This document shows, piece after piece, positions 32,760 to 45,048 of a stretch of 64,000 nt of DNA (position 1 is its first letter; each line of letters begins with the position of its first letter). The position numbers and the translations under genes were made by a program. The notes beneath the pieces are model-generated. The model had not been told where the DNA came from and made no database searches. It saw only the letters and a list, made by a program, of their open reading frames with translations. The stretch lies in sequence record MN047793.1. One strand, written 5' to 3'.

Positions 32760-33056
32760 ATGGAAATCAACTTCCCCGAAGCGTTTAATGAACTGATAAC
32801 TTCTGAACGCATTAAAATGCAGAAGTTGTTTTTAAAGCAAGTTGCTCAGAACGTTATAGCACATGACCGCGCTGTCATTGCTCGCGAAAATCCTACCAAT
32901 AGAAATCTGGACCGTGCATTCACTGCAATCTCTCGTGCGTCTATGGGGATTGGCTTCATGAATCGGCATGCCAAAAATCTATGGGGTCTCAGCCGGCCAA
33001 AATACTGGAGTGAATTTATCATTCAAGAAACCAATCGAATCCGAGAAGTATCATGA
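32760..33056 (+). CDS. Hypothetical protein
   Basis: ORF after the tRNA. Confidence 0.55.
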   Translation: MEINFPEAFNELITSERIKMQKLFLKQVAQNVIAHDRAVIARENPTNRNLDRAFTAISRASMGIGFMNRHAKNLWGLSRPKYWSEFIIQETNRIREVS

Positions 33057-33262
33057 ATCGTAATGTAGATGGTATTCTACCATGCCCATTCTGTGGGTTT
33101 GATGTTGGTAAAGCCTTTAATTTCGAATCACAAGATATTTCTTATCCAGTCAGTGGTAACGTGTGGCAGTTTGGTTGCAATGCTACCATTGGTGGATGTG
33201 ATGCAACCATGCTTGGTGTCAGTGAAAAAGATGCCATTAAAAATTGGAATAAACGTGCCTAA
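33053..33262 (+). CDS. Lar-like restriction-alleviation zinc-ribbon protein
   Basis: LPCPFCG...C..GGC.A...EKDAIKNWNKR. Confidence 0.65.
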   Translation: MNRNVDGILPCPFCGFDVGKAFNFESQDISYPVSGNVWQFGCNATIGGCDATMLGVSEKDAIKNWNKRA

Positions 33263-33373
33263 ACTTACTAAAAATGTGTGGGATTCATTTCTTGATACCA
33301 CCTACAAATTGCGTTGGGTGTACATTATTGGTGTTCCTGTGGCATTTGTAGTGGGTCTATACCTGCGATAATT

Positions 33374-33562
33374 ATGGTCACTGACTACTATGAGATGTGG
33401 AAATGGGCGGATGCTGATCGGCATCGGCTCATTGGTGCTGAATGGGTTGCCACAAAGCGTGCAATCCGTGCTGAAGCTGAAGTCAAAGAATTGAAGAAGA
33501 AAATCCTTGACATGCAGCGGCAACCTGAATTATTATTCCCATCTATTAAACATAAAGGTTAA
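33374..33562 (+). CDS. Hypothetical protein
   Basis: Coiled-coil ORF. Confidence 0.5.
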   Translation: MVTDYYEMWKWADADRHRLIGAEWVATKRAIRAEAEVKELKKKILDMQRQPELLFPSIKHKG

Positions 33563-33567
33563 TTCAC

Positions 33568-33777
33568 ATGTCTGATGATGCTATAAAGCGCCAACGAAAT
33601 GAATTTGATGCGGTACTTGATCTAGTCAATGCCTATAATAGTCTGGCACCTATTGTAGATGATGATTATCCGGAAACCCGCTATCGTTATGAAATGGCTC
33701 TCGGTGGACTAGTAGAGGCAATGAAGGCCAATGAACGATTCGTAGCAGGTAATCGTTTTCACCTAGCAGTTAAATAA
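33568..33777 (+). CDS. Hypothetical protein
   Basis: 69-aa ORF. Confidence 0.6.
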   Translation: MSDDAIKRQRNEFDAVLDLVNAYNSLAPIVDDDYPETRYRYEMALGGLVEAMKANERFVAGNRFHLAVK

Positions 33778-33819
33778 AAGTTGACACCGGCAACTGATTC
33801 AAGTAGTATAGCAGTCATT

Positions 33820-33915
33820 GGGGAGTTAGCTCAGTTGGTAGAGCATCGGGCAATAAACCGGCCGGTTTGCTAGAAGTCCCGAGGGTCGATGGTTCGAGAC
33901 CATCACTCCCCACCA
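33820..33915 (+). ncRNA. tRNA-like RNA with a 27-nt anticodon loop
   Basis: GGGGAGT/ACTCCCC-A-CCA, canonical D and T arms, TCGGG/CCCGA stem enclosing 27 nt. Confidence 0.8.
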
Positions 33916-33933
33916 ATATTATCGAGATTAATA

Positions 33934-34146
33934 ATGACTTACCTTGTAAATCAACCCCTTCGCAAAGGTGATATTGTCAAGGTTGTAGGTAATAAAACTG
34001 GGGTAGACAATGCAATTGGAGTAGTTCATTATATGAACAACCTTACTGCTATTGCAACTATTGACTTTAGACGTACTCGTAAAGAATTACACATTAGTAA
34101 ATTGGAATTAATTGATAGGAAAAATAATCAATTAAATTTATTTTGA
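33934..34146 (+). CDS. Small SH3/KOW-like hypothetical protein
   Basis: LRKGDIVKV..G.V. Confidence 0.55.
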   Translation: MTYLVNQPLRKGDIVKVVGNKTGVDNAIGVVHYMNNLTAIATIDFRRTRKELHISKLELIDRKNNQLNLF

Positions 34147-34254
34147 CAATTTAATACAGAAACACTAAATAAGAATTATGAACAAACTTTATTACAAACG
34201 ATATTATAAAAAGCTTCCGTAAGGATTGCGTACGTTTGTATGCGGTCCTGCAAC

Positions 34255-34330
34255 GGGACCGTAGCTCAATGGTTAGAGCATTCGCCTCTTAAGCGACAGG
34301 TTGTGAGTTCGAGTCTCACCGGTCCCACCA
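34255..34330 (+). tRNA. tRNA-Lys(CTT)
   Basis: Loop CTCTTAA, CCA. Confidence 0.9.
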
Positions 34331-34352
34331 AATTCCACCCAAAGATACCACC

Positions 34353-34592
34353 ATGTATACACTAGAACAGTTAGCGCTTTTTGATAGATGCTTGTTCCCT
34401 GGAGATTTTCAGACTCAGTTGATGAATGTTGGTATGTCTGGGTTCCAAGCAGCTGTGATTAGTGGATTCATAGAATCGAATCGACGTAAGGGTAACATGG
34501 TAGGAATTATTCAAGTGTATCAAGAATTTATCGATAGTGAAGAAATAACCAAGGCAATCGATGCCGTTGTAAGTGAGTTCGTAAACAAGTAA
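34353..34592 (+). CDS. Hypothetical protein
   Basis: 79-aa ORF between tRNAs. Confidence 0.55.
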   Translation: MYTLEQLALFDRCLFPGDFQTQLMNVGMSGFQAAVISGFIESNRRKGNMVGIIQVYQEFIDSEEITKAIDAVVSEFVNK

Positions 34593-34599
34593 AGAATAA

Positions 34600-34675
<76 letters not shown>

Positions 34676-34764
34676 GTTTCTTGCAAGAAGAAAGCTCGTG
34701 ACCCTGCGTAAGACTGGGGCACCGTATCAAGAGGGGTACAAGTCCTCAAGTCTTACTCAAATTC

Positions 34765-34851
34765 GGATGAGTATGCAAGCGGTCAAAGCTCGGGGACTGT
34801 AAATCCTCTCCCTTAACGGGTTCGTAGGTTCAAATCCTACTTCATCCACCA
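34765..34851 (+). tRNA. tRNA-Tyr(GTA)
   Basis: Type II, loop CTGTAAA, CCA. Confidence 0.92.
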
Positions 34852-34936
34852 AATCAGAAGTCAAGTATCGAAAGGTGCTTGACTTTTTTATTTTCTATCG
34901 TTATAATTTAAATATCACTCAACTAGGAAATTTTAC

Positions 34937-35332
34937 ATGGGCACTCGGTCTACCACTCTCATCACTCTTGATGGCGAACCTCTGGTCAAGTTGTACCGTC
35001 AATACGATGGGTACCCCTCCAGACATGGTTCGGAACTCGCTGAATTCATGGATGGTTTCACCTATGTAAATGGTATTAGCCGTGATATTACCGGTAAGAT
35101 TGCCAATGGCGTTGGCTGCTTTGCGGCTCAGTTGATTAAGCACTTCAAGAAGGATGCTGGTGGGGTGTATATCATCCCGATGACATCAGGCGGTCAAGAT
35201 TTCGACTATGTGATCAAATTTGTCACTGTCGATGAAGGGTTTGAATATCTGGAAGCACTGGATACGATTGAAATTGTGGACCACTTCTCCGGTAATCTCG
35301 TTGAATTCACGGAGTTTTGTAGCAAAGATTGA
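34937..35332 (+). CDS. Conserved phage hypothetical protein
   Basis: MGTRS..LYRQYDGYP..G. Confidence 0.75.
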   Translation: MGTRSTTLITLDGEPLVKLYRQYDGYPSRHGSELAEFMDGFTYVNGISRDITGKIANGVGCFAAQLIKHFKKDAGGVYIIPMTSGGQDFDYVIKFVTVDEGFEYLEALDTIEIVDHFSGNLVEFTEFCSKD

Positions 35333-35580
35333 CTTGACTTCTTTCGTTTTCGTGTTATAATTTACTAATAGTTAATAAGGGAGTAGTCATGAGCAATGAA
35401 TTTATTCTTTCCCAGATGGAATACTACAAGAACAACTTGAACTGTGGTCCGTCACGTGACTGGAACCTGATTTCTGGCCTGTATCAGCATTATCGTAGCG
35501 TAGCAGTGGCCCGTGGTTTGATTGCTTGACTTCTTTCGTTTTAGTGTTATAATTTATGCATACCAACCGGAGATACTGAC

Positions 35581-35829
35581 ATGGGTTACTACAAAGATAA
35601 TCAAGGCATTGACTGTTTCAGCCCGGATAACACCGAAAATACATTGTATATCGAGATAGGCAACGGTGAAAAAAGTGCAGATGCACTTACGGAAAGTATT
35701 CACGAACATTTCGGCGATATCGGTAATGCGTACAGCATTTCTGCCGAAAAGATTCATACCCGTTGCCTTGGGTATGACCTGTATGATTCCAGTGATTACG
35801 ATATGTTCCTTATTATTACGAAGGATTGA
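35581..35829 (+). CDS. Hypothetical protein
   Basis: GGAG RBS, own promoter. Confidence 0.65.
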   Translation: MGYYKDNQGIDCFSPDNTENTLYIEIGNGEKSADALTESIHEHFGDIGNAYSISAEKIHTRCLGYDLYDSSDYDMFLIITKD

Positions 35830-35864
35830 GTTGACACTACAACTTAATATGATAAGATGAGGGT

Positions 35865-36227
35865 ATGAAATATATCCTCATTCTATTACTATTAATGTTG
35901 ACCGGCTGCAACAGACCACATTGGAGCCGTCAGATGTCTGATCTTGAAGTGAAAATTGCGACTGACAAATGCACTAAAAATCATCATGGAACAACTGAAT
36001 TAGCTGTTCGACAGATACGCCGTGGTTCTGATGAAACGTATGCCGTCAGATGCTATACTGAAGATGGATTAGTCAGTGTGACGTATTCTTATGTAGTTGA
36101 ATATGATCGGTGGGAACTTATATGCAAAGAACAACATTCAACGGTCGAAATGACCCCTAATGGATTGGCATGTAAGAATGATATTAGTAAGACTTCACTA
36201 GAAACTATCGCAGAAGATCATCTATAA
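35865..36227 (+). CDS. Putative lipoprotein
   Basis: MKYILILLLLMLTG|C lipobox. Confidence 0.65.
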   Translation: MKYILILLLLMLTGCNRPHWSRQMSDLEVKIATDKCTKNHHGTTELAVRQIRRGSDETYAVRCYTEDGLVSVTYSYVVEYDRWELICKEQHSTVEMTPNGLACKNDISKTSLETIAEDHL

Positions 36228-36264
36228 TTGTTGACATCTCAATTCGTTGTGTTATAATTTATCC

Positions 36265-36555
36265 ATGCCTACGATAACATACGACCAAACGTACATTAAT
36301 CTTCAGCGCGCATATGAAGTGTTGAAGTTACTGGCTGATCATAGTGATGAACCAGTAGTAGTGAATCGGTCATACATTCGTGACGATACGATTGGTTTGA
36401 ATTTCAAGTTCAAACGGTTGAATTATCTATTGGTCATGTCTAATGATAAAGAACGTAACTTTGCAGTGTGGTATACTTCCCGTCAAGGGCATGTAATTAA
36501 GAAGCCATATACAACAATTGAAATCTACACTCAAAAATTTATTGACAAGTCATAA
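36265..36555 (+). CDS. Hypothetical protein
   Basis: Start at MPTITY after the promoter. Confidence 0.55.
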   Translation: MPTITYDQTYINLQRAYEVLKLLADHSDEPVVVNRSYIRDDTIGLNFKFKRLNYLLVMSNDKERNFAVWYTSRQGHVIKKPYTTIEIYTQKFIDKS

Positions 36556-36593
36556 TTTGTGTAGTTAAATACTATCGTATCGGCATTATAACC

Positions 36594-36779
36594 ATGAAAA
36601 ATATTAAATTTCGCGAAAATTGGTCTAATGGTAAGGTTGATGTTTATCTTGATGACAGAGTAGTATATTCTTCGCGGGAATATAAATTTGCCGCAGAATA
36701 TGTAATGAGAAATCATGGTGTAACCGAGTCACAAATGCACGAGATTTACACCGATTATAAAGAAGATTACGACTCGTAA
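36594..36779 (+). CDS. Hypothetical protein
   Basis: 61-aa ORF. Confidence 0.5.
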   Translation: MKNIKFRENWSNGKVDVYLDDRVVYSSREYKFAAEYVMRNHGVTESQMHEIYTDYKEDYDS

Positions 36780-36790
36780 ATACAATATTT

Positions 36791-36866
36791 GGCCTTGTAG
36801 CTCAGCGGTCAGAGCAGGAGCCTCTAAAACTCTAGGTCGTGGGTTCGATCCCCACCAAGGCCACCA
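36791..36866 (+). tRNA. tRNA with CTA anticodon (amber suppressor-type), Lys-like body
   Basis: GGCCTTG/CAAGGCC-A-CCA; arm GGAGC-CTCTAAA-ACTCT; T arm like the neighbouring Lys(TTT). Confidence 0.85.
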
Positions 36867-36884
36867 AATTACAGGTACCCCAAC

Positions 36885-37508
36885 ATGCCTATAGGTAATA
36901 GCAAAGTAATGGTTACCAAGCATGTTATGGAACGGATTCAACAACGCTTCCCTAATTTGTTTGGAAAGTATTTCGGCAACGAAACCATGTTGCGAAATCT
37001 GATCATTGCTCAGGTTTCGACTGGTGAACGCTTAGAAGACTGGAAGCGGGTTCCATTTTATAAAAACAAAATGGATACCGAATATGGTCCAGGCACTGAG
37101 ATTGTTCGTAAGTCTGGTGTCTACTATCTGTGTCAGCTAACCGATAACAGTAAGTACCTTCGGGTGTTGACAGCAGTTCCAGGGACGCTCTATTACCCTA
37201 GAGCTGACTCCATTGCGGTCGGTACGAAGGGTGGAGCTAGATACTTCAATGTGAATGAGTACATTAACCGGTTGCATGGTGAGGCTCTAAAAGAGTATCG
37301 AATCCGTAGCAATGGGGTTAATCCCGCTCAGAAGCATGCTGGACACTCTTCATCGGCGGAATTTGCTCAAGTAAATGCACTAAAGCAGTCACTTAGACAA
37401 AATATCTACAACTCGCGGAAGAAAATGCTAAAGAATCCGCGTGATGTAGTAGGGCGATTGAAGCACGAAGAAAAATCGCCAAATTGCAAAAACAGCTTGA
37501 CGAATTAG
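36885..37508 (+). CDS. Hypothetical protein
   Basis: 207-aa ORF; N-terminal TKHVMERI.QRF resembles RelE-like folds (weak). Confidence 0.6.
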   Translation: MPIGNSKVMVTKHVMERIQQRFPNLFGKYFGNETMLRNLIIAQVSTGERLEDWKRVPFYKNKMDTEYGPGTEIVRKSGVYYLCQLTDNSKYLRVLTAVPGTLYYPRADSIAVGTKGGARYFNVNEYINRLHGEALKEYRIRSNGVNPAQKHAGHSSSAEFAQVNALKQSLRQNIYNSRKKMLKNPRDVVGRLKHEEKSPNCKNSLTN

Positions 37509-37534
37509 AAAAAAGTGGTAAATTATAGATGTAC

Positions 37535-37631
37535 GGGGAGTAAGCACATTGGTTATGGGCATCGACTGAGGAGGGAGTGAAACCTAACTCCGGCGAAGGT
37601 AGTGAGGTTCGATTCCTCATACTCTCCACCA
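37535..37631 (+). ncRNA. tRNA-like RNA with expanded anticodon domain
   Basis: GGGGAGT/ACTCTCC-A-CCA, T arm TGAGG-TTCGATT-CCTCA, internal GGAG/CTCC hairpin; own sigma70 promoter. Confidence 0.7.
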
Positions 37632-37666
37632 ATTAACGATCTTATTTAACACATTAGAGCGTACTA

Positions 37667-37978
37667 ATGAACGAAGTCCTCCAGAAAATGTTCCCCACCG
37701 GTGTCCTTAATGGACATGGTACCGAAGTGAATGGACTGAACGCTGGTGTGATTCCGCAAGGGGTCATCCTGAAACAGGCCCAGAGTAGTTTTGACAAATA
37801 TAACCGCAGGGAATGGTTTCTTGTGGAATCTGATGGATACACAGCATTACTGCGGGTATGCACTGCTAGTAAGGGTGCAGGTTATGATGAATTCGCGGTC
37901 ATTCGCGGTATTGTGCCTAGCAGTGATGCAACGCAAGTGGCTGAATTTCACAGGTTCTTTGAACAACAGACTAGCTAA
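37667..37978 (+). CDS. Hypothetical protein
   Basis: 103-aa ORF. Confidence 0.65.
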   Translation: MNEVLQKMFPTGVLNGHGTEVNGLNAGVIPQGVILKQAQSSFDKYNRREWFLVESDGYTALLRVCTASKGAGYDEFAVIRGIVPSSDATQVAEFHRFFEQQTS

Positions 37979-38081
37979 AAAGTAGTTGACAATTTGAAGA
38001 AACGTGGTAAAGTAGTTACATGAGGTGACGGCATCGAGGCCACTCACCAGTTCTTTTACAATTTGAGCGGTAATGAACGAA

Positions 38082-38296
38082 AGTTCATATATGGGAGCGG
38101 CTTCGGTAGGTTCGAATGCCAATCCATCGGATGTTGTCATGGTGAACGGCGTAAGCCCTATCCACTAGCTAGGAAAAAATGGCAGCAAGTTGAGATAACG
38201 CCACTAGCCCGGTATCTCTCTATTCACTATCAGGACTGTGTGCACGCTAATGTCCGGCGAATCCGAAAGCCAGAGGCCAATCCCATATATGATCTT
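38082..38296 (+). ncRNA. Multi-branched structured RNA cassette
   Basis: Perfect 12-bp closing helix TCATATATGGGA(38085-96)/TCCCATATATGA(38281-92); GNRA and T-loop-like hairpins inside. Confidence 0.65.
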
Positions 38297-38348
38297 AACA
38301 ACCACAAGAGGGCAATGAGTAATCATCCTGGCGGGGTTGTTGTGTTTA

Positions 38349-38472
38349 CGGCAGGTAAGCAAGGGGCCAAAGCTGGGCGCTTAAGGTGTAGATACTTGAA
38401 AAGGTATCAGAGATGGTAGAGTCTCCCACAAGCACCTCTAATTCGTAGGTTCGAATCCTACCCTGACGACCA
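38349..38472 (+). ncRNA. 124-nt tRNA-like RNA with a two-hairpin insert in the anticodon arm
   Basis: CGGCAGG/CCTGACG-A-CCA; Tyr-like D arm; T arm GTAGG-TTCGAAT-CCTAC. Confidence 0.7.
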
Positions 38473-38479
38473 AGTTAGT

Positions 38480-38563
38480 ATACACATTTGCTAGAAGGTG
38501 AGCCTTCGAAGTAAGCTAAGTAAGAAATACCGGAGAAAGCCCGAGCTTACAGCAGATGTGTAT
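38480..38563 (+). ncRNA. Stem-closed structured RNA cassette
   Basis: 13-bp helix ATACACATTTGCT/AGCAGATGTGTAT with inner GAAGG/CCTTC and GTAAGCT/AGCTTAC stems. Confidence 0.55.
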
Positions 38564-38669
38564 CTAAAAACGTAGGAATACTGCCCAAAGCCGGTTCCTA
38601 TTGTCTGGAATGCGATAAAAAATTGCCGAGCTAGCGTTTCTAGCCCATGTCCAGACACCCTTTTTAAAT

Positions 38670-38819
38670 ATTTTGGTGGCGAAAGTGGTATACGCGGGGG
38701 CCAAGGCCAATATGATGTGGGGAGCTAAACATTCTCCATGCTGCTCATGGCCGAAAACTGCTGTCTTAGACGTTGCAGCTATACGTGACGACATGTGGGT
38801 TCGACTCCCACCCAAAATA
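38670..38819 (+). ncRNA. 150-nt tRNA-like RNA (Leu-type D arm, ~100-nt insert, no encoded CCA)
   Basis: ATTTTGG/CCAAAAT; TGGCGAAAGTGGTATACGC; GTGGG-TTCGACT-CCCAC. Confidence 0.65.
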
Positions 38820-38894
38820 CTATATAAGTTATACTGTGACTTTCTACGGTAGAGTACTTGGAAACAAGCTCCGAATGTAGACACAGTTGCAATA

Positions 38895-38998
38895 TCAAAA
38901 ATACTCACGTATTTGGCACAGGAAAACCAGACGGAGTAATCGGTCGCTTATTTTCTCGGGTGCGTCCCCAGGATTTAGAGTGGTTAGAGTATTTTTGA
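38895..38998 (+). ncRNA. Stem-closed structured RNA cassette
   Basis: Perfect 12-bp IR TCAAAAATACTC/GAGTATTTTTGA. Confidence 0.5.
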
Positions 38999-39002
38999 AC
39001 AA

Positions 39003-39083
39003 TATGACTGTAGAGGGATTCGTCCCTCAGATGTTGAAATGAAGGACAGGAACACGGGAGTTCGATTCTCCCCAGGTCCACCA
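39003..39083 (+). ncRNA. ssrA: tmRNA acceptor piece (3' part of a permuted ssrA; 5' boundary approximate)
   Basis: GGGAG-TTCGATT-CTCCC T arm, CAGGTCC-A-CCA; pairs with GGGCCTG at 39231 giving G3:U70. Confidence 0.85.
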
Positions 39084-39230
39084 AAAATATATTACCCTAC
39101 CCAAGGGGTTGTCAGCAGGGTTGGAAGGACTGACACATGCAAAAACTATTCAGCCGTTGTAATGGCGTGTTGTTGGGAAGGTTCAAAATCCCGGTATAAA
39201 TGAATAGCGAATCCGTAATGTATTTTTGAT

Positions 39231-39410
39231 GGGCCTGCACTGGTTTCGACTCTTGGAGATAATGGAGATTGACAGTTGGTCACACAAGACTTTAAAATGA
39301 AGACAGAGAAGTCTCTAATCACAAAGAATTAAACGACAACGTTGATTCATTCGATTTCGCCATGGCGGCCTAATCCCAAGCACATCTAGCACTTGGTCAC
39401 CCGACGCTAG
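39231..39410 (+). ncRNA. ssrA: tmRNA coding piece (5' acceptor strand plus tag ORF; 3' boundary approximate)
   Basis: GGGCCTGcaCTGGTTTCGAC start; tag reading frame ...NDNVDSFDFAMAA* at 39332-39373. Confidence 0.88.
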
Positions 39411-39432
39411 AGCAATATGTAGTCTCGACTGC

Positions 39433-39534
39433 ATATTGTCCTACAATCTTGTGATATGTGTGGCTTCGTCTCCATACTCATAATCATGAATGTTATTCGG
39501 CCATGTCGATGTGGCTTAGATTGTAGGACAATAT
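39433..39534 (+). ncRNA. Stem-closed RNA cassette
   Basis: Perfect 17-bp IR ATATTGTCCTACAATCT/AGATTGTAGGACAATAT. Confidence 0.55.
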
Positions 39535-39542
39535 ACAGTTTT

Positions 39543-39686
39543 AGAGTGTATATTAAAGCCAAAGTTGCTATTAAATCTCGATAACTGGTTTAGGTCTTGC
39601 TCACCTTCCAGATAAACGAGAGCCTTGAGCGAGAAGGAATGAGGGGACGGCAGTCGCCCTCCAATGGAGGCTTTAATATACATTTT
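39543..39686 (+). ncRNA. Stem-closed RNA cassette
   Basis: 15-bp helix GTGTATATTAAAGCC(39546-60)/GGCTTTAATATACAT(39669-83). Confidence 0.55.
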
Positions 39687-39688
39687 AT

Positions 39689-39768
39689 GCGATAGTAGAT
39701 GTAAGCCAAGAATGGTAATGGTGGGGCTGTAGGGCTACGCATGCATGGTTCGAATCCATGCCATCGTC
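39689..39768 (+). pseudogene. Degenerate tRNA-like element
   Basis: GCGATAG/CCATCGT acceptor, CATGG-TTCGAAT-CCATG T arm, no clear anticodon arm or CCA. Confidence 0.4.
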
Positions 39769-39890
39769 AATCTATCGAAGTCAGAGCGGTCATTATGGCA
39801 CTCATATTTGATTTGAGTAAACGGCGTAAATGGTCTAACGGGACCTAGCTCTGGCGGTACTATTCTAGGAGAAGTGATATGGGTTGTGGA

Positions 39891-40160
39891 ATGAGTGCAG
39901 TACGTGATGATCAAGACGAATTAGCCGATATTTTAAAGCAATTTCGTCTCAATAATCATCCTGAATTTGGTAACATTGACGTTTATTCACATGAAGCACG
40001 ACTATTAAAGTCGTTAAGTCGTGATGTAACAGTAACGACAGAACAAGCAATTGAAAAGCTAGTGTGGGATAAGCATGAACGTGCAGCTAAGGCCGCGTTC
40101 GCCAAGGAAATGGAAGAGCGTAAGACTCTTGCCGAACTCCGTACTAAATACGGTAGTTAA
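39891..40160 (+). CDS. Hypothetical protein
   Basis: 89-aa ORF. Confidence 0.55.
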   Translation: MSAVRDDQDELADILKQFRLNNHPEFGNIDVYSHEARLLKSLSRDVTVTTEQAIEKLVWDKHERAAKAAFAKEMEERKTLAELRTKYGS

Positions 40161-40168
40161 AAGTTTAT

Positions 40169-40243
40169 GCGAGCTTAACTCAGTGGTAGAGTGTCAGCCT
40201 TCCAAGCTGTTCGTCATCGGTTCGAATCCGATAGTTCGCTCCA
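40169..40243 (+). tRNA. tRNA-Gly(TCC)
   Basis: Loop CTTCCAA, U73, CCA. Confidence 0.93.
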
Positions 40244-40247
40244 CATT

Positions 40248-40884
40248 TTGATGGGTGGTCGGTAGCTCTACAAGGCCCTATTATTACTCCATATCTTTAG
40301 CGAAAGTGCACGCCCGGAATTAACTGGGTCTGCGGTATGCAGAGGGAGATTGATTATTATCTACACATGACCCATCAATTTTTAATTGGATAGAGTGCAG
40401 TTAGCCGGTATCATTGGAAATATCCAAGCATCGCAAAGTGACAATGCCGATGATATCCTGATGCACATAATCCATACTAATACTGATGCGATAAAGTGTA
40501 AGTGGCTACATACAAGGCTCATAACCTTGAGTGCCGGTTCGACTCCGGAATTCGCTACCAAATTGTAAACATCATGCAAAATGTGTAAAAATAGTGATCA
40601 CTGATCGGCTAGTGAAACAGATTAGGATGTTGTTTACAACCAAATACCATCAGGTCAAAAGTTAACGACTAGTATTAACGAGTATGTGTAAGAACATATA
40701 CCTATGGTACCCAAATCAAAGCATGTGATTCATGCCCCGCCACATGGGAAGCGTGGCTCTGCTCTATCATTGCAAACTGTATATGATATGCGTTTTGATG
40801 GTTTCAAGTAAACCATTGGTGCTAAGCCGGTTTTGGGAGTCATTTTCTGCACCCGATAAAGAAAACTCCACATGGTCTGGTATT
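40248..40884 (+). ncRNA. Second block of stem-closed structured RNA cassettes
   Basis: Closing helices 40248-56/40370-78, 40563-70/40632-39, 40643-49/40878-84; T-loop+ACCA end at 40533-40560; no credible ORF. Confidence 0.5.
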
Positions 40885-40940
40885 GACAAATGCTTATACT
40901 GATGATAAAGTATTGGCTACTAAATTTCTAGGACATCTTT

Positions 40941-41204
40941 ATGAATATTCAAGCACGTGTTGTAAGTACGCACCAAGGCCATAAAGGTGATGGACAGCAA
41001 ATCCTCGACGCAGGACTCAATATCAATGACATCGTGGATGTTGATAAAATTGATATGGGTGGCTCCTATACCACAATCACTCTGAAAGGCCATAAGGGCT
41101 ATTTCAATAGTGTGAACTTCGAATTTTTGGAAAATGGTAAGATGCTGGATATCTACCAAGATAAGCGCTTCTTTTCTAACGATTATTTTATTAGTTCACA
41201 ATAA
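40941..41204 (+). CDS. Hypothetical protein
   Basis: AGGA RBS, promoter upstream. Confidence 0.65.
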   Translation: MNIQARVVSTHQGHKGDGQQILDAGLNINDIVDVDKIDMGGSYTTITLKGHKGYFNSVNFEFLENGKMLDIYQDKRFFSNDYFISSQ

Positions 41205-41839
41205 TTATATGTGAGGTAGTTGTTGGCTTTCATGAGGCCAGCCAAACCTTAAATGGTTGCTTCACCCCCAATTCGTAATAACATAGGAATTCAACATGAT
41301 GTATGAAGGCGGTCCCGTCTATCCTGAGATGACCAGCATCCCTAAAGACCACTTGGACCAACTCAAAAAGGTATTGAAGTGGGTCAAGGACAATCCAGGG
41401 ATTCATCCGGAAAATATCAAAACCGAATTGCGTAATTTGGAAAAACTTTTCGGAGTGTAATAAATAGAAATTCATAGAGGAGTACATTATGAAAAATCTA
41501 AGCGATAAAGATACAATGGTAGATACTGCGGTAGGTGAAGGCATTGCTTGCGAAGAGATTCGTAAGGTAGAACCAGATTGGACAATTAGCCAAGATAAGC
41601 AAGGCTAGTAAGTAAACTGCGACTATTTGTCGAACTGCTCCGGTGGAGTGGGCTTATGTAGGGCCAAAGTGTGCAGGGAGTTCCCCTAGTATCTCATTGC
41701 AACGACGTTACATAAGTTATGGACTAGGAATACCTCACGTTCTCAATTAGTAGTCTGACGAACGGTTGATTAATGACTATTCAAAGTGCCTTGTGGTAAA
41801 AAACTTTCGGTGATGAAAAGGCTATAACCGAACATATTT

Positions 41840-41924
41840 GGGCTGGTGGCGGAATTGGTAGACGCGCCAGATTTAGGTTCTGGTACCGAAAGGTGTGAGG
41901 GTTCGATTCCCTCCTAGCCCACCA
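41840..41924 (+). tRNA. tRNA-Leu(TAG)
   Basis: Type II, loop TTTAGGT. Confidence 0.95.
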
Positions 41925-42117
41925 ATAGATGATGGCGAACGATGTAAGGGCATCAAGTAGTCTAGCGAAGTGTATTCTAGTTGGAGCACAATAGCGAAGT
42001 GGCCTCGGAACACATGGGGAGAGACTAGATAGGCCGCATCCTAACTGCGTATGGTAATTCATATGAGAGTATTGAACACTGAAATAGCCGTTCGCGGTCC
42101 CCACTCTCACTAATTTT

Positions 42118-42192
42118 GGACCCTTCGTCTACTGGCTAGGATAGGAGCCTTTCAAGCTCTTGAAAGGGGATCGAAACCCCTAGGGTCTACCA
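42118..42192 (+). tRNA. tRNA-Glu(TTC)
   Basis: Loop CTTTCAA, CCA. Confidence 0.9.
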
Positions 42193-42254
42193 ACAATACT
42201 TGACAGATACGATTTGTTCGTATAAGATATCTATCAAGTAATCAAACATGTACC

Positions 42255-42301
42255 AGTGAGCAAGATTTCGCGGGTTATAGCTCACTCGGATGTAAACCCG
42301 C
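42255..42301 (+). ncRNA. H-type pseudoknot RNA element
   Basis: P1 AGTGAGC/GCTCACT, P2 GCGGGTT/AACCCGC interleaved. Confidence 0.6.
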
Positions 42302-42588
42302 CAATTTTTAAGTCTAGAGACCTTTGTGCAGACGGCCATTAAAGTGGGCTATGCATAGAATCGACAAAATTGCAATGATGCTACTCATTGTGGACAAAGC
42401 GATTGCTCTCGTAGCAGAGAGAACGGGTAGAAAAGTGAAGTTGGCCTGAATGCGGTTTGCTAGTATGGTTCGGAAACGCCGAAAGGGTTTGCCCAAGAAG
42501 ACAACACTGACTAACCAAGGTACTGTAGATTTTATTTGACAACTCCTGTGTTCTGATCTATAATTTAGAAAATCAAACGAGAACACCC

Positions 42589-43299
42589 ATGCTTATCAAG
42601 AATATTTCCCCAACTACTCTCATCACCAGTGGTGTTGGTGTTGCAGTGTCTTGGGTTATTGGTCTTATGACCGTTTCTGTTCTCTTCGTAGTGTTCAGCT
42701 ATCTCAACGATGCTCGGAACAATTACAACGCTGTCAAGCAACTGGATATTGTGTCTGTTGGCCGAATCCATACCTTCAGTGGTATTACGTCTAAGAATGG
42801 CTCCAACATTGTCCACCATGATTGTGTAGCTGTTGAAGTAAACAACGACGTTATGATGCGCGATAAGAGCGCTCCGTCCGGGTCAAGTGCTTATTGTAAT
42901 AATCTATTCATTGAATATCTTCCTAACTGGAAGTTGCTGGCTAGTCCGGATTCGATGAAGATTATTGAACGGTCGTTCTGGTCGGTGGCTATCTGTGTGG
43001 TCGTCATTGCTGGCTTCTATCTTGCTTTGCGTATTCCTGCAATCCTCATCTGCTGTGTCGTTAAGCCGTTGATGCCTTATTACAATTTGGTTACGTTTGT
43101 CTTCCTGCTTCCTGTGTTCTATGTCCTGGCTTTGTTCCTCAGTAGTGCATGGGAGTATCATCCTAAGCTCTGGGTGACGCCTGACGGCCGTGGCGTGAGT
43201 ACTGAAGCCATCTACGTCACTAAGGACGGAAGCCTCTACAATCGCCCGGAATCGTCCTTTGAGTGGACTCAGGCAAAAGCAGGTAAGCCGATTCGATGA
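42589..43299 (+). CDS. Multi-pass membrane protein
   Basis: One N-terminal and two C-terminal TM segments. Confidence 0.75.
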   Translation: MLIKNISPTTLITSGVGVAVSWVIGLMTVSVLFVVFSYLNDARNNYNAVKQLDIVSVGRIHTFSGITSKNGSNIVHHDCVAVEVNNDVMMRDKSAPSGSSAYCNNLFIEYLPNWKLLASPDSMKIIERSFWSVAICVVVIAGFYLALRIPAILICCVVKPLMPYYNLVTFVFLLPVFYVLALFLSSAWEYHPKLWVTPDGRGVSTEAIYVTKDGSLYNRPESSFEWTQAKAGKPIR

Positions 43300-43715
43300 G
43301 TACTGAGTTCCTTTCCGTACCGAGTCGTCGTGAAGAACGGTTTTTCAAGCGAGCACGTGAAATTAGTCTCAAGTCTGACCATACCAAATGTAAGATTGGT
43401 GCTGTCATTGTTTTGGGCAATTATGTGGTGTCATCTGGCGTAAATCGGATGAAAAGCCACACAATTCAGGCAAGATATGACAAGAAAATGAACTATTATG
43501 GCCTTTTTCAGCGTTTGCACTCTGAAATTGATGCCCTGATTAGTAGTTCTAGGGTTGATTTGGGTGATGCAGAGATTTATGTGTACCGCGAATCTAGCCT
43601 TGGACAGATTGGCAACTGTAGGCCTTGTGTCAGCTGTACACAGGCCATTAGGGATGCTGGTATCCGTCATGTGTTCTATACCTTGCCCGAAGGGTTTGCA
43701 TACGAACATTGGTGA
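43296..43715 (+). CDS. Cytidine/deoxycytidylate deaminase-family protein
   Basis: IGAVIV..SGVN, HSEIDAL, PCVSC zinc motifs. Confidence 0.85.
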   Translation: MSTEFLSVPSRREERFFKRAREISLKSDHTKCKIGAVIVLGNYVVSSGVNRMKSHTIQARYDKKMNYYGLFQRLHSEIDALISSSRVDLGDAEIYVYRESSLGQIGNCRPCVSCTQAIRDAGIRHVFYTLPEGFAYEHW

Positions 43716-43812
43716 TTGACATTGTGGCAACTAGTTGCTATTATAGATTCATAGTCACTGACTAGATACATGAATAAACAGCAATACTAAATAGATTCAC
43801 AATTAAACTCAT

Positions 43813-43889
43813 CCGGGTTTAGCGCAGTCTGGTAGCGCGTCTGCTTTGGGAGCAGAGGGTCGCAGGTTCGAATCCTGCAATCCGGACCA
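43813..43889 (+). tRNA. tRNA-Pro(TGG)
   Basis: Loop TTTGGGA. Confidence 0.95.
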
Positions 43890-43932
43890 AATTCAAAAGT
43901 GAGCCACTACTTAATGTGGCCCTAAAATATAC

Positions 43933-44009
43933 GCCGGTATAGCTCAGCCCGGTAGAGCAACCGCCTTGTAAGCGGTAGGTCCACAGTTCGAATCTGTGTG
44001 CCGGCACCA
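43933..44009 (+). tRNA. tRNA-Thr(TGT)
   Basis: Loop CTTGTAA. Confidence 0.95.
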
Positions 44010-44037
44010 AATAACACACCTTAATAAGGTATAACTC

Positions 44038-44706
44038 ATGTCTACGCTCGGTCTTGACTTCGCGCCCTCTCATAAATCCACACGTACTGTCACTATTGCT
44101 CGTCAAGCATACTTGGAGCTATTGCATACTGAGTTAGAGCCTCTTAAGCTATTGCGTGATGCCCGTGAATTGGAAATTGAAACATGGATATCTTCTCCCG
44201 AACGTAAGGAAGAAGCCAAGAAATTATTGGTTCAGAGTGTGTTGAAAACATGCTATAGTGAACTGGTTAGCTTTACTTTGAAAAAATATCTGTACCCAAA
44301 GCTTAACCTTTTTCAAAAGGTAAAGTGGAATTGGGGATTTGCGTATACCCAAAAAGTTGACTATGCTGAATCTGTAGGGTTTAATTATCCAGTTGAAGGG
44401 TTCTATAAACATTACTCTTATTGGATGGATAACGGACTTCAGCAAGTATATGGTGTGTATCAAGAGTACGCTGACACCAATCTAACGTATGATGAATTTG
44501 CACAACAACTGTTAGATGAATACATGGCTAAGCACGAAATTGAAGCATGGCAAGTAGTTTGCCGACTGAACCATGTATGGCATCATGCTAGAAATGTATA
44601 CAGCGACAAAGTTAAAACCATCGAGACTTTGGCAGCATCAATTGATAAAGTGACAGATGCAACATTTACTATCTCTGAAAACGAATTTATCAATCTAACT
44701 AAATAA
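44038..44706 (+). CDS. Hypothetical protein
   Basis: 222-aa ORF. Confidence 0.75.
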   Translation: MSTLGLDFAPSHKSTRTVTIARQAYLELLHTELEPLKLLRDARELEIETWISSPERKEEAKKLLVQSVLKTCYSELVSFTLKKYLYPKLNLFQKVKWNWGFAYTQKVDYAESVGFNYPVEGFYKHYSYWMDNGLQQVYGVYQEYADTNLTYDEFAQQLLDEYMAKHEIEAWQVVCRLNHVWHHARNVYSDKVKTIETLAASIDKVTDATFTISENEFINLTK

Positions 44707-44716
44707 GCAGTATTAT

Positions 44717-44971: not shown

Positions 44972-45048
44972 GGGTACCTAGCTCAATCCGGCAGAGCATT
45001 CGCCTCCAAAGCGAACGGTTGGGGGTTCGATTCCCTCGGTGCCCGCCA
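44972..45048 (+). tRNA. tRNA-Trp(CCA)
   Basis: Loop CTCCAAA, G73. Confidence 0.92.

What the first reader, a model, noticed from the sequence alone, without database searches (positions are those of the whole stretch)
38082..39686. Tandem array of helix-closed structured RNA cassettes around the tmRNA
About 1.6 kb without a credible ORF is tiled almost end to end by modules, each closed by its own long, often AT-rich helix: 38085/38292 (12 bp), 38480/38563 (13), 38602/38657 (8), 38833/38887, 38895/38998 (12), 39082/39228 (14), 39433/39534 (17) and 39546/39683 (15). Inner GNRA and T-loop hairpins are present. It lies downstream of one sigma70 promoter at ~37986. This looks like a polycistronic ncRNA operon whose units could be released by dsRNA or tRNA-type processing. 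Large ornate RNAs (GOLLD, ROOL) are known near phage tRNA clusters, but I cannot match this region to them by eye.
Basis: partly seen in the sequence, partly recalled or inferred. Interest (0 to 1): 0.85.

Follow-up and report, generated by a model that had tools for sequence, protein, structure and literature searches.

The report
Phage stable-RNA operon around split tmRNA
This protein-free 1.9 kb stretch of a giant Xanthomonas phage looks like a small "ribosomal-RNA-style" operon that makes a two-piece tmRNA plus several other folded RNAs. One of those RNAs belongs to an apparently undescribed leucine-tRNA-shaped class that also occurs in unrelated phages.

Summary
The window is the first 64 kb of Xanthomonas phage Xoo-sp13. 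Four are perfect and at least 12 bp long, against none in 100 shuffles. The region is not one ornate RNA, and it is not GOLLD or ROOL.

Behind a conserved promoter lies a hairpin plus a boxA-like leader (GTTCTTTTACAATTT; E. coli rrn has GCTCTTTAACAATTT). Downstream come:
- M1, a ~215-nt RNA closed by a 23-bp covarying helix, shared with XacN1 and Stenotrophomonas phage RAS14.
- M2, a 124-nt tRNA-like RNA ending in CCA.
- M5, a 150-nt tRNA-Leu-like RNA.
- A permuted two-piece tmRNA (Rfam RF04321, 65.7 bits; tag DNVDSFDFAMAA).
- M8, a conserved helix-closed module.

Very stable hairpins specific to Xoo-sp13 fill the gaps.

M5 has six relatives, in cyanophage S-CRM01, Pseudomonas phage GP100, XacN1 and three uncultured viruses. 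In this family 28 of 43 pairs covary, including a pseudoknot. It has no Rfam match.

The best reading is a Nus/boxA-antiterminated polycistronic precursor cut by RNase P, RNase III and 3' trimming. Transcription and processing are inferred, not shown.

The parts
37986..38013 (+). Sigma-70-type promoter, TTGACA-16-TAAAGT with an extended -10 TG
   Evidence: Found by the scan. It is nearly identical in XacN1. It belongs to a promoter family that recurs at 45661 and 40883.
38024..38048 (+). Leader hairpin in the boxB position (GGTGA...TCACC)
   Evidence: Conserved in XacN1 (GGTGAcggcatagaggccaCTCAC) and in RAS14 (GGTGA..CCACC). It sits where boxB sits in the E. coli rrnB leader.
38050..38064 (+). 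boxA-like element, GTTCTTTTACAATTT
   Evidence: 13 of 15 bases match E. coli rrnB GCTCTTTAACAATTT. XacN1 has GTTCTTTAACAACTT and RAS14 has GTTCTTTAACAATTT. It is the only exact TTCTTTWACAA in the 64 kb window.
38081..38296 (+). M1: ~215-nt structured RNA closed by a 23-24 bp helix
   Evidence: Inverted repeat I2. z-score -3.2. Homologs exist in XacN1 and RAS14. In the three-sequence alignment 94% of cells pair, 10 of 28 pairs change on both sides, 0 of 500 shuffles reach this, and slid controls give at most 2. No Rfam hit.
38299..38345 (+). Short hairpin (CAACAACC/GGTTGTTG) inserted relative to XacN1
   Evidence: Read from the sequence. A 51-nt insertion relative to XacN1 lies here (alignment A1).
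38349..38472 (+). M2: 124-nt tRNA-like RNA with a 7-bp acceptor, canonical T arm, discriminator and encoded CCA; the D and anticodon regions are expanded
   Evidence: T arm followed by CCTGACG-A-CCA. The XacN1 ortholog has compensatory changes in two acceptor pairs, two T-stem pairs and one anticodon-like stem pair. The Rfam tRNA score is only 16 bits and ARAGORN makes no call.
38480..38563 (+). H3: branched hairpin with no counterpart in the XacN1 alignment
   Evidence: z-score -6.3, 0 of 200 shuffles fold as well. Aligned to a gap in XacN1.
38598..38661 (+). H4: small three-way hairpin, largely unaligned with XacN1
   Evidence: z-score -3.6. XacN1 and RAS14 carry a different T-loop hairpin at this position.
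38670..38819 (+). M5: tRNA-Leu-like RNA. It has an acceptor stem, D arm, long variable arm and T arm. The anticodon loop is replaced by a P4-P5 domain that forms a pseudoknot with the variable-arm loop. No CCA is encoded.
   Evidence: Seven-member family. Covariation: 89.8% of cells pair against 66.6% in shuffles, and 28 of 43 pairs change on both sides. After family members, the best hits of model R1 are tRNA-Leu genes. The D arm resembles the phage's own tRNA-Leu genes (family D16).
38831..38889 (+). H6: hairpin absent from XacN1
   Evidence: z-score -2.8. Aligned to a gap in XacN1.
38895..38998 (+). M7: module closed by a perfect 12-bp AT-rich helix, absent from XacN1
   Evidence: z-score -2.0. 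Aligned to a gap in XacN1. No homology to the tmRNA intervening loop.
39030..39083 (+). tmRNA acceptor piece: P2 strand, T arm, 3' acceptor strand CAGGTCC, A73 and CCA
   Evidence: Rfam RF04321 spans 39030-39373 at 65.7 bits against a gathering score of 47.
39084..39230 (+). Intervening segment of the permuted tmRNA gene, predicted to be excised.
   Evidence: Shown as an insert in the Rfam alignment. Inverted repeat I5, 39073-39095/39215-39237.
39231..39425 (+). tmRNA coding piece: 5' acceptor strand GGGCCTG (giving G3:U70), GGTTTCGAC loop, tag ORF 39335-39373 (DNVDSFDFAMAA stop), pseudoknot and terminal hairpin
   Evidence: The XacN1 ortholog scores 123 bits and has tag ANANTFDYALAA.
39426..39541 (+). 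M8: module closed by a 22-bp helix. Its 5' arm can instead pair upstream with 39397-39424.
   Evidence: Inverted repeats I1 and I4. z-score -6.1. The closing helix is kept in XacN1 (L002 5028-5042/5122-5136).
39542..39687 (+). M9: module closed by a 19-bp AT-rich helix, with no clear counterpart in XacN1
   Evidence: Inverted repeat I6. z-score -5.8. Poorly aligned with XacN1.
39688..39792 (+). M10: degenerate cloverleaf with a good T arm (CATGG-TTCGAAT-CCATG), no 7-nt anticodon loop and no CCA
   Evidence: Not called by ARAGORN or Rfam.

Best explanation
The region is a phage operon for stable RNAs, built like a miniature rRNA operon. One early-type promoter (37986) starts a transcript of at least 1.8 kb that is not translated. 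Its leader carries a hairpin and a boxA-like sequence. These would recruit the host NusB/NusE antitermination complex, so that Rho does not stop the untranslated RNA. Dense folding of every spacer would help in the same way. The precursor is then cut into pieces. RNase P would cut at the 5' ends of the three tRNA-shaped units: M2, M5 and the tmRNA coding piece. 3' trimming would proceed back to the encoded CCA of M2 and of the tmRNA acceptor piece. RNase III would cut the duplexes of 19 bp or more that close M1, the tmRNA intervening loop, M8 and M9. The products would be: (1) a two-piece tmRNA that is charged with alanine and tags stalled proteins with DNVDSFDFAMAA; (2) M1; (3) the tRNA-like M2; (4) M5, a tRNA-Leu mimic whose anticodon loop is replaced by a conserved pseudoknotted domain that is probably its working part; and (5) spacer hairpins of uncertain value. 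What is shown: the folds, the covariation, the tmRNA identity and the conservation of the leader. What is inferred: transcription as one unit, antitermination, the nucleases involved, and any function of M1, M2 and M5.
For: tmRNA: RF04321 at 65.7 bits. G3:U70, A73, CCA and the tag ORF are read directly from the sequence. Leader: the promoter, hairpin and boxA-like element are conserved in three phages. They occur in the same order as the E. coli rrnB P2 leader (boxB hairpin, boxA, then the 5' strand of a long helix), with 13 of 15 boxA positions identical. No plus-strand intrinsic terminator was found across 37986-41000, apart from weak matches inside the tmRNA intervening loop and M9. M1: 10 of 28 pairs covary in three phages. 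M2: compensatory changes in the acceptor and T stems. M5: seven members, 28 of 43 pairs covary, 0 of 500 shuffles reach this. All modules lie on the plus strand, which is also the better-folding strand. All 26 tRNAs of the island encode CCA, as do M2 and the tmRNA acceptor piece. The literature states that permuted tmRNA precursors are cleaved by tRNA-processing enzymes (PMC11915505). It also states that rrn leader-trailer helices follow boxA (PMC10250234).
Against: There are no expression or end-mapping data. The boxA-like element has U where E. coli has the C of GCUCUUUA, and the Xanthomonas rrn boxA could not be fetched for comparison. H3, H4, H6, M7 and M9 have no counterpart in the XacN1 alignments, so selection on them is unproven. 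A strong promoter-like match lies inside the tmRNA at 39269, although it is not conserved in XacN1. M5 encodes no CCA, unlike every tRNA of this phage. M2 is supported by only two sequences. RAS14 keeps the leader and M1 but showed no tmRNA in the 10 kb examined, so the set of units is not fixed.
Confidence: 0.6

Rival explanations
1. The region is a patchwork rather than an operon. On this view a functional tmRNA gene sits in a tRNA island among decaying tRNA pseudogenes (M2, M5, M10) and neutral or selfish hairpin insertions, each transcribed or not on its own.
For: The island holds several other odd tRNA-like elements, at 37536, 40470, 47563 and 49920. M10 looks degenerate. Five hairpin modules have no XacN1 counterpart. 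The module content differs among XacN1, Xoo-sp13 and RAS14.
Against: M1, M2, M5 and M8 keep their helices through compensatory changes. M5 is conserved from cyanophages to Pseudomonas and Xanthomonas phages, including a pseudoknot, which decay would not preserve. The hairpins are not a repeat family. Only one conserved promoter plus leader precedes the array.
Confidence: 0.2
2. The whole stretch is one giant ornate RNA of the GOLLD/ROOL type, or a divergent GOLLD, that folds and assembles as a single unit.
For: The syntenic loci of XacN1 and RAS14 carry GOLLD next to the same leader/M1 unit, at 227 and 218 bits. GOLLD is typically embedded in phage tRNA arrays (PMC6582537).
Against: There is no GOLLD or ROOL hit in the window at gathering threshold, nor at E of 10 or less in this region. 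Blastn with the XacN1 GOLLD finds CM1, RAS14, BUDD and X1 but not Xoo-sp13. Each module closes on itself, and modules are gained or lost one at a time between relatives. In XacN1 the GOLLD has its own promoter downstream of this array.
Confidence: 0.03
3. The AT-rich inverted repeats act at the DNA level, for example as a replication origin, a packaging or recombination site, or endonuclease targets, rather than as RNA.
For: Several closing helices are AT-rich perfect palindrome-like arms. tRNA islands of large phages are hot spots for homing endonucleases; RAS14 has an HNH gene in its island.
Against: The helices contain G:U pairs and fold better on the plus strand, -477 against -433 kcal/mol summed. 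Loops are long, 30-170 nt, and structured, unlike cruciform sites. The conserved modules covary in the manner of RNA, with G:U intermediates. No endonuclease ORF is present in the region.
Confidence: 0.04

Closest known systems
Permuted (two-piece) tmRNA genes, Rfam RF04321 / beta_tmRNA RF01850, including phage-borne copies such as Melnitz
   Same: The gene order is the same: acceptor piece, intervening loop, coding piece. The T arm, G3:U70, A73, CCA, a tag ORF ending in AA plus stop, and a pseudoknot after the tag are all present. The XacN1 ortholog passes the betaproteobacterial model (107.8 bits against a gathering score of 84). Two-piece tmRNAs are already known in phages: 53 of 133 unique phage tmRNAs (PMC9004378).
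   Different: The host is a soil and plant Xanthomonas phage, whereas most reported cases are marine or aquatic. The inferred resume codon is GAC. ARAGORN does not call it and the GenBank stretch examined (31.9-45.9 kb) lists no RNA features. It lies inside a larger array of non-coding RNAs behind a boxA-like leader.
Bacterial rrn operon leader (boxB-boxA-boxC with a leader-trailer helix cut by RNase III)
   Same: The sequence of elements matches: promoter, then hairpin, then a boxA-like sequence (13 of 15 identical to E. coli), then about 20 nt, then the 5' strand of a long helix that encloses a structured RNA. Further RNAs with tRNA-type ends follow.
   Different: The enclosed RNA is about 170-215 nt of unknown function, not 16S rRNA. 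No boxC sequence is recognisable. Nus factor binding is untested. The element is phage-encoded.
T4 RNAC (species 1, 139 nt) and RNAD (species 2, 119 nt)
   Same: They are stable RNAs of 120-140 nt encoded inside a phage tRNA cluster. RNAC carries a T arm and paired ends. Their function is still unknown (PMC3014915 and PMC9697503).
   Different: There is no detectable homology: the M5 model hits T4 tRNA-Leu but not rnaC or rnaD. M5 keeps a full D arm and a variable arm and has a pseudoknotted insert. M2 encodes CCA.
GOLLD RNA (RF02032) in phage tRNA arrays
   Same: It occupies the same genomic niche, and the same leader style precedes it in XacN1 and RAS14.
   Different: There is no sequence or structure match in Xoo-sp13. 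The modules here are small and independent.
Class II tRNA-Leu
   Same: M5 shares the acceptor stem, U8, a 3-bp D stem with an 11-nt loop carrying GG, a long variable arm and a GTTCGA T loop. The best non-family hits of the M5 model are tRNA-Leu genes at 40-50 bits.
   Different: There is no 7-nt anticodon loop. A domain of 60-70 nt replaces it and pairs with the variable-arm loop. The discriminator base is not conserved and no CCA is encoded, although all tRNAs of this phage encode it.

Membership tests
Permuted two-piece tmRNA (RF04321) | Covariance-model score above the curated gathering threshold | tested here: met
   65.7 bits against 47, E = 2e-10, full model 1-213.
Permuted two-piece tmRNA (RF04321) | Circularly permuted order: T arm, 3' acceptor strand and CCA lie upstream of the 5' acceptor strand, with an intervening loop between them | tested here: met
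   39056-39083 (T arm, CAGGTCC, A, CCA), a 147-nt loop, then GGGCCTG at 39231.
Permuted two-piece tmRNA (RF04321) | G3:U70 wobble and A73, the alanine identity elements | tested here: met
   Pairing 5' GGGCCUG with 3' CAGGUCC gives G3:U70. The discriminator is A. Both are read.
Permuted two-piece tmRNA (RF04321) | Tag reading frame ending in a hydrophobic ...AA followed by a stop codon | tested here: met
   39335-39373 encodes DNVDSFDFAMAA then a stop. This aligns with XacN1 ANANTFDYALAA.
Permuted two-piece tmRNA (RF04321) | Processing into two base-paired RNAs and SmpB-dependent trans-translation | not testable with these tools
   Requires Northern blots or end mapping, plus tagging assays.
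GOLLD RNA (RF02032) | Match to the conserved 3' domain model | tested here: not met
   No hit in the window at gathering threshold, nor at E of 10 or less in 37900-39900. The same model scores 227, 218 and 182 bits in XacN1, RAS14 and BUDD. Blastn with the XacN1 GOLLD does not find Xoo-sp13.
ROOL and other large ornate RNAs in Rfam | Match to the family model | tested here: not met
   The scan of the whole window against Rfam 15 returned only tRNAs and the tmRNA.
Canonical tRNA (RF00005) | Cloverleaf with a 7-nt anticodon loop and a score of at least 29 bits, or an ARAGORN call | tested here: not met
   M2 scores 16.2 bits. M5 and M10 give no hit. ARAGORN calls none of them. The acceptor and T-arm halves are canonical.
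rrn-type Nus antitermination leader | A boxA sequence after the promoter, preceded by a hairpin and followed by the 5' strand of a long processing helix | tested here: met
   GTTCTTTTACAATTT against E. coli GCTCTTTAACAATTT. The order and spacing are comparable to rrnB. The arrangement is conserved in XacN1 and RAS14.
rrn-type Nus antitermination leader | NusB/NusE binding and Rho-resistant elongation | not testable with these tools
   Requires binding assays or reporter assays. The host's own rrn boxA could not be retrieved.
T4 RNAC/RNAD | Sequence or structure homology to rnaC or rnaD | tested here: not met
   On the T4 locus, model R1 hits only tRNA-Leu (L003 2873-2958), not rnaC or rnaD. 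The resemblance is one of kind only.
YrlA / bacterial Y RNA (RF02553) | Match to the family model | tested here: not met
   No YrlA hit at E of 10 or less in the region. From my own knowledge, not tested here: YrlA closes on the Ro-binding stem, whereas M2 and M5 end at the acceptor stem.
M5 family (proposed here) | Shared architecture supported by covariation in independent lineages | tested here: met
   Seven distinct sequences. All 8 acceptor pairs, all 3 D-stem pairs, 5 of 8 P5 pairs, 3 of 5 pseudoknot pairs, 5 of 6 P6 pairs and 3 of 5 T-stem pairs change on both sides. In the hand-made alignment the pseudoknot reaches 5 of 5.

The most novel reading that the evidence does not exclude
Large Xanthomonas and Stenotrophomonas phages co-opt the host rRNA antitermination system (boxA/Nus) to run 'mini-rrn' operons. 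These operons deliver a toolkit of tRNA-shaped effector RNAs. One of them, M5, founds an unrecognised class of tRNA-Leu mimics that occurs in cyanophage, Pseudomonas-phage and Xanthomonas-phage genomes. In this class the anticodon loop is replaced by a pseudoknotted domain. The class would act on a host tRNA-binding factor (LeuRS, a tRNA-directed defence nuclease or the ribosome) rather than in decoding.
Probability: 0.3. Interest if true: 0.75.

Novelty: new variant of a known kind. Interest (0 to 1): 0.55.

Why it matters
Phage tRNA islands are usually annotated as tRNAs plus 'hypothetical' gaps. This case shows that such a gap can hold an organised operon of stable RNAs.

Three points would interest specialists if confirmed:
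- A phage appears to use an rrn-type boxA leader to protect a long untranslated transcript. That gives a testable answer to how phages express kilobase-scale non-coding RNAs, GOLLD included, without Rho termination.
- A tRNA-Leu-shaped RNA class with a conserved pseudoknotted insert is shared by unrelated phages. It is a candidate new tRNA mimic, comparable to the T4 RNAC and RNAD puzzle, which is still unsolved.
- A two-piece tmRNA occurs in a phage of a plant pathogen. This extends a feature thought to be mostly marine and corrects the public annotation.

The tmRNA itself is ordinary.

Tried and rejected
1. Finding relatives through the upstream ORF 37667-37978. IMG/VR gave nothing. The 5.8-billion-protein search returned only the query itself.
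2. Exact-pattern scans of IMG/VR for the leader, the tmRNA pseudoknot, an M5 core and an M2 core. All found nothing.
3. The single metagenome scan, with the M5 pattern. Only L120, identical to L007, was real. The pattern was too loose for that collection.
4. The genome-contig scan with a tighter M5 pattern. It gave four chance hits, none confirmed by the model.
5. Two further IMG/VR patterns for M5. They recovered the same four contigs.
6. Blastn with XacN1 M1 plus M2. It gave only T-arm matches to tRNA-Asn genes.
7. The idea that M5 is a tRNA-Leu with an intron, or that the P5 loop is an anticodon. I rejected it because the insert is only 60-70 nt, the junction sequences are not anticodon-like, and P5 loops range from 7 to 13 nt.
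8. The idea that M5 or M2 is a tag-less tmRNA. I rejected it because neither has G3:U70.
9. The idea that M7 is a duplicate of the tmRNA intervening loop. No homology was found.
10. A search for a conserved protein neighbour of M5 across loci. None was found; the hits were spurious ORFs over the RNA itself or antisense to the upstream gene.
11. The idea that the hairpins are a dispersed repeat family. None was found.
12. Phage BUDD as a further comparator. It has GOLLD inside a dense tRNA array, but model R1 found no M5 there; M1 and M2 were not searched for.
Full report
**Where the window comes from**

Blastn shows that the window is identical to bases 1-64000 of Xanthomonas phage Xoo-sp13 (MN047793.1), a 309-kb jumbo phage of X. 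oryzae pv. oryzae, with the same coordinates. The GenBank record annotates only CDS features in the stretch examined (31.9-45.9 kb). It leaves 37979-39878 empty. ARAGORN and Rfam find 26 tRNA genes between 32.6 and 52.9 kb, all on the plus strand, so the finding lies inside a large tRNA island.

**Checking the observation**

- Perfect Watson-Crick arms: 38085-38096/38281-38292 (12 bp), 38895-38906/38987-38998 (12 bp), 39433-39449/39518-39534 (17 bp) and 39547-39560/39669-39682 (14 bp).
- Imperfect but long arms: 38480-38506/38537-38563 and 39073-39095/39215-39237.
- Smaller stems at 38602/38657 and 38833/38887.

None of 100 dinucleotide-preserving shuffles of the region contained a single perfect helix of 12 bp or more; the region has four. 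Folding z-scores are:

| Module | Coordinates | z-score |
|---|---|---|
| H3 | 38480-38563 | -6.3 |
| M8 | 39426-39541 | -6.1 |
| M9 | 39542-39687 | -5.8 |
| H4 | 38598-38661 | -3.6 |
| M1 | 38081-38296 | -3.2 |
| H6 | 38831-38889 | -2.8 |

The tRNA-like pieces have z-scores near zero. In 11 of 13 modules the plus strand folds better than its complement, -477 against -433 kcal/mol in total.

The longest ORFs in the region are 118 and 114 aa. They have no PHROG match. Alignment with the sister phage shows indels of 1, 6 and 17 nt and larger through them. A sigma-70-type site, TTGACA-16-TAAAGT with TG, lies at 37986-38013.

**The tmRNA**

Rfam's permuted-tmRNA model (RF04321) matches 39030-39373 over its full length at 65.7 bits, against a gathering score of 47. 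The following features can be read directly from the sequence:
- The upstream piece ends with a T arm (GGGAG-TTCGATT-CTCCC), the 3' acceptor strand CAGGTCC, A73 and CCA (39056-39083).
- The 5' acceptor strand GGGCCTG starts 147 nt later, at 39231. Pairing it with the 3' strand gives G3:U70, the alanine identity pair.
- The GGTTTCGAC loop follows.
- The tag frame at 39335-39373 encodes DNVDSFDFAMAA followed by a stop. It aligns with the ANANTFDYALAA tag that ARAGORN reports for XacN1.

ARAGORN itself misses this gene in Xoo-sp13.

Phage-borne two-piece tmRNAs are known. 53 of 133 unique phage tmRNAs were two-piece, mostly from marine phages (PMC9004378). Their precursors are cut by tRNA-processing enzymes (PMC11915505).

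**Relatives are few**

The 'phages' collection holds only one phage alignable over much of the region, XacN1 (AP018399, about 78% identity over the shared blocks). The leader and first module are also found in Stenotrophomonas phages RAS14 and CM1. Four IMG/VR pattern scans, a protein-based IMG/VR scan and a search with the upstream ORF against 5.8 billion proteins found nothing closer.

In XacN1 the syntenic ORF-free gap (L002 4010-6503) contains the same promoter, leader, M1, M2, M5, tmRNA (123 bits) and M8. Behind a second promoter it also contains a GOLLD RNA at 227 bits. RAS14 has the leader, M1 and a GOLLD at 218 bits, but no tmRNA in the 10 kb examined. Xoo-sp13 has no GOLLD or ROOL hit. 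Blastn with the XacN1 GOLLD finds CM1, RAS14, BUDD and X1 but not Xoo-sp13.

**The leader**

From the promoter onward the three phages share three elements. They share a hairpin (38024-38048, GGTGA...TCACC). They share GTTCTTT(T/A)ACAA(T/C)TTGAGCGG. About 20 nt later they share the 5' strand of the long M1 helix.

For comparison I fetched the E. coli rrnB P2 leader. It reads: promoter, then the boxB hairpin GCCGCT...AGCGGC, then TGCTCTTTAACAATTTATCAG, then boxC. Here boxA is the segment a published study deleted as -147 to -133, and boxC lies in the 5' strand of the leader-trailer helix (PMC10250234).

Over the 15-nt core, Xoo-sp13 matches 13 of 15 positions and RAS14 matches 14 of 15. The motif occurs exactly once in the 64-kb window. 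I therefore read the leader as an rrn-type antitermination signal. That is an inference from sequence and arrangement. I could not retrieve the Xanthomonas rrn leader, and no binding data exist.

**M1 (38081-38296)**

M1 is closed by a 23-24 bp helix. Directly inside that lies a GGUAG/CUAUC helix. Across Xoo-sp13, XacN1 and RAS14:
- 94% of cells pair.
- 10 of 28 pairs change on both sides.
- 0 of 500 column shuffles reach this.
- Slid controls give at most 2.

M1 has no Rfam match in any of the three phages. In XacN1 and RAS14 the GOLLD unit starts right after a similar leader tail (GGTTTGACAACTTG...). M1 thus occupies the position of a product RNA rather than of a mere leader.

**M2 (38349-38472)**

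M2 has a 7-bp acceptor stem (CGGCAGG/CCTGACG, with one G-A mismatch), a canonical T arm, A73 and an encoded CCA. Every tRNA of this phage also encodes CCA.

The XacN1 ortholog (TGGTAGG/CCTACCA, G73, CCA) differs by compensatory changes in two acceptor pairs, two T-stem pairs and one pair of an anticodon-like stem. About 60 nt replace the D arm, including a GAAA-capped hairpin, and the 'anticodon' loop has 14-15 nt. M2 is not a decoding tRNA: the Rfam tRNA score is 16 bits and ARAGORN makes no call. It is known from only two phages.

**M5 (38670-38819), the most informative piece**

A relaxed blastn hit led to an unannotated gap between tRNA-Ala and tRNA-Val of cyanophage S-CRM01. A pattern built from the shared motifs then found three IMG/VR contigs. 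A further blastn found Pseudomonas phage GP100. With XacN1 that makes seven distinct sequences.

All seven share the following architecture:
- An acceptor stem of 7-8 bp (12 bp in GP100).
- U8.
- A 3-bp D stem with an 11-nt loop carrying GG.
- A short stem, P3, in the place of the anticodon stem.
- Instead of an anticodon loop, P4 (GCCA/UGGY), a conserved internal loop (AUAYGGAU), and a P5 hairpin whose loop contains CUAA or UAA.
- A long variable arm, P6.
- A GTTCGA T arm.
- Five bases 3' of P5 pair with the loop of the variable arm. This pseudoknot covaries: UAGCU/AGCUA, UGGCU/AGCCA, GCGCU/AGCGC, GCAC/GUGC and GCUGC/GCAGC.

I also counted pairs on the model-made alignment. That alignment mis-registers the two Xanthomonas sequences in P5, P6 and the pseudoknot, so the count is conservative. 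Even so:
- 89.8% of cells pair, against 66.6% in shuffles.
- 28 of 43 pairs change on both sides.
- 0 of 500 shuffles reach any of the measures.
- Slid controls give at most 15.

After the family members, the best hits of covariance model R1 are tRNA-Leu genes of Xoo-sp13, RAS14, BUDD and T4, at 39-50 bits. The M5 D arm is 84-89% identical to those of the phage's own tRNA-Leu genes. M5 is thus a tRNA-Leu derivative.

It is not in Rfam 15. I found no description of it in the paper library. In S-CRM01, L008 and L009 it sits among tRNA genes. In GP100 it sits among small early genes. No protein neighbour is shared. No member encodes CCA, and the discriminator base varies.

**The remaining modules**

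M8 (39426-39541) keeps its closing helix in XacN1. Xoo-sp13 has ACTGCATATTGTCC.../...GGACAATATACAGT and XacN1 has ACTGTCTATTGTGAA/TTCACAATATGCAGT. In both phages its 5' arm can instead pair with the terminal hairpin of the tmRNA (39397-39424). I cannot say what this conserved alternative pairing means.

H3, H4, H6, M7, M9 and the small hairpin at 38299-38345 have no counterpart in XacN1, and most align to gaps there. At the H3/H4 position XacN1 and RAS14 carry a different T-loop hairpin. The Xoo-specific modules are not copies of one another or of anything else in the island. M7 is not a duplicate of the tmRNA loop. M10 (39688-39792) is a degenerate cloverleaf with a good T arm.

**How it most likely works**

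Shown:
- The folds exist and exceed chance.
- Five units are under selection for structure.
- One unit is a complete two-piece tmRNA gene.
- The promoter and leader are conserved.
- Everything lies on one strand, with no plus-strand intrinsic terminator apart from weak matches inside the tmRNA intervening loop and M9.

Inferred:
- One transcript starts at about 38020.
- The boxA-like element loads host Nus factors, so Rho does not terminate the untranslated RNA.
- The almost gap-free folding of the spacers may serve the same end by leaving no free RNA on which Rho can load.
- RNase P cuts at 38349, 38670 and 39231.
- 3' trimming stops at the encoded CCA at 38472 and 39083.
- RNase III cuts the duplexes of 19 bp or more that close M1, the tmRNA loop, M8 and M9. 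This is analogous to the leader-trailer helices of rRNA.

The products would be the tmRNA, which gives the phage its own ribosome rescue and tagging, plus M1, M2 and M5. For M5 I propose that the tRNA body provides maturation and stability, and that the pseudoknotted domain replacing the anticodon loop is the working part. This is a guess. I put 0.6 on the operon-and-processing picture as a whole.

**Comparison with what is known**

The tmRNA is an ordinary member of a known family and meets every sequence-level criterion. The leader works like an rrn leader, but membership cannot be proven without Nus binding data.

M2 and M5 are of the same kind as T4 RNAC and RNAD, which are stable RNAs from a phage tRNA cluster whose function is still unknown (PMC3014915 and PMC9697503). 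They are not homologous to them. The locus is not GOLLD or ROOL, although it shares GOLLD's niche.

The patchwork alternative (0.2) is weakened by the covariation. The single-giant-RNA alternative (0.03) and the DNA-element alternative (0.04) are weakened by modularity, G:U pairs and strand asymmetry.

**Limits**

- M1 rests on three sequences and M2 on two.
- The M5 pseudoknot count is best in a hand-made alignment fitted to the structure. The independent tool count is lower but still clear.
- Nothing here shows transcription.

Noticed in passing
window 37536-37630; about 40470-40563; 47563-47669; 49920-50005: Four more elements carry a T arm but are called as tRNA by neither ARAGORN nor Rfam. 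37536 has an 8-bp acceptor stem plus CCA. 40470 has a perfect CAU anticodon arm but a weak acceptor stem. 47563 is 107 nt and ends in CCA. 49920 lacks CCA and lies behind its own promoter-like site at 49777, after a structured leader of about 120 nt.
   Followed up: partly
window 36791-36866; L002 3497-3655; L004 3785-3857: An amber-suppressor-type tRNA with anticodon CTA (ARAGORN labels it 'Pyl') is conserved just upstream of the ncRNA locus. Xoo-sp13 and RAS14 have one copy and XacN1 has two tandem copies.
   Followed up: no
L002 6020-6433; L004 8600-9025; L135 5921-6348: GOLLD RNAs scoring 227, 218 and 182 bits are present but not annotated in the GenBank records of XacN1, RAS14 and BUDD. 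In XacN1 and RAS14 the GOLLD has its own TTGACA promoter and a conserved structured leader ending in GGTTTGACAACTTG, which resembles the boxA-like leader of the M1 operon.
   Followed up: partly
L002 4437-4505 and L004 5527-5595; L002 about 5370-5480 and L004 about 7830-7930: XacN1 and RAS14 share two further T-loop-containing modules that Xoo-sp13 lacks. One is a hairpin closed by GCACAG/CTGTGC. The other lies upstream of the GOLLD promoter and contains ...CCGTTAGG...GAAAGGACTAC...
   Followed up: no
window 39397-39454 and 39518-39539; L002 5010-5045 and 5122-5136: The arm 39427-39454 has two mutually exclusive partners, one upstream (the tmRNA terminal hairpin) and one downstream (the M8 closing helix). 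The same choice is conserved in XacN1. It could be a processing or termination switch.
   Followed up: partly
window 33820-33915: A 96-nt tRNA called Tyr with anticodon ATA scores 57 bits with Rfam. Its length and anticodon are unusual.
   Followed up: no
L007 814-934 (minus strand): A 121-nt stretch on the same uncultured-virus contig as one M5 member scores 30 bits with the M5 model. It may be another expanded tRNA-Leu-like RNA.
   Followed up: no
window 37974-38021, 45649-45696, 40883-40911: A recurring promoter family, with an AT-rich upstream stretch, TTGACA, about 14 nt, then TGGTAnAGT, marks several units of the tRNA island.
   Followed up: no
window 31900-45900 (record MN047793.1): In the 14 kb examined, the public Xoo-sp13 record lists only CDS features and no tRNA or tmRNA. 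ARAGORN misses this tmRNA, so only the Rfam permuted-tmRNA model reveals it.
   Followed up: yes
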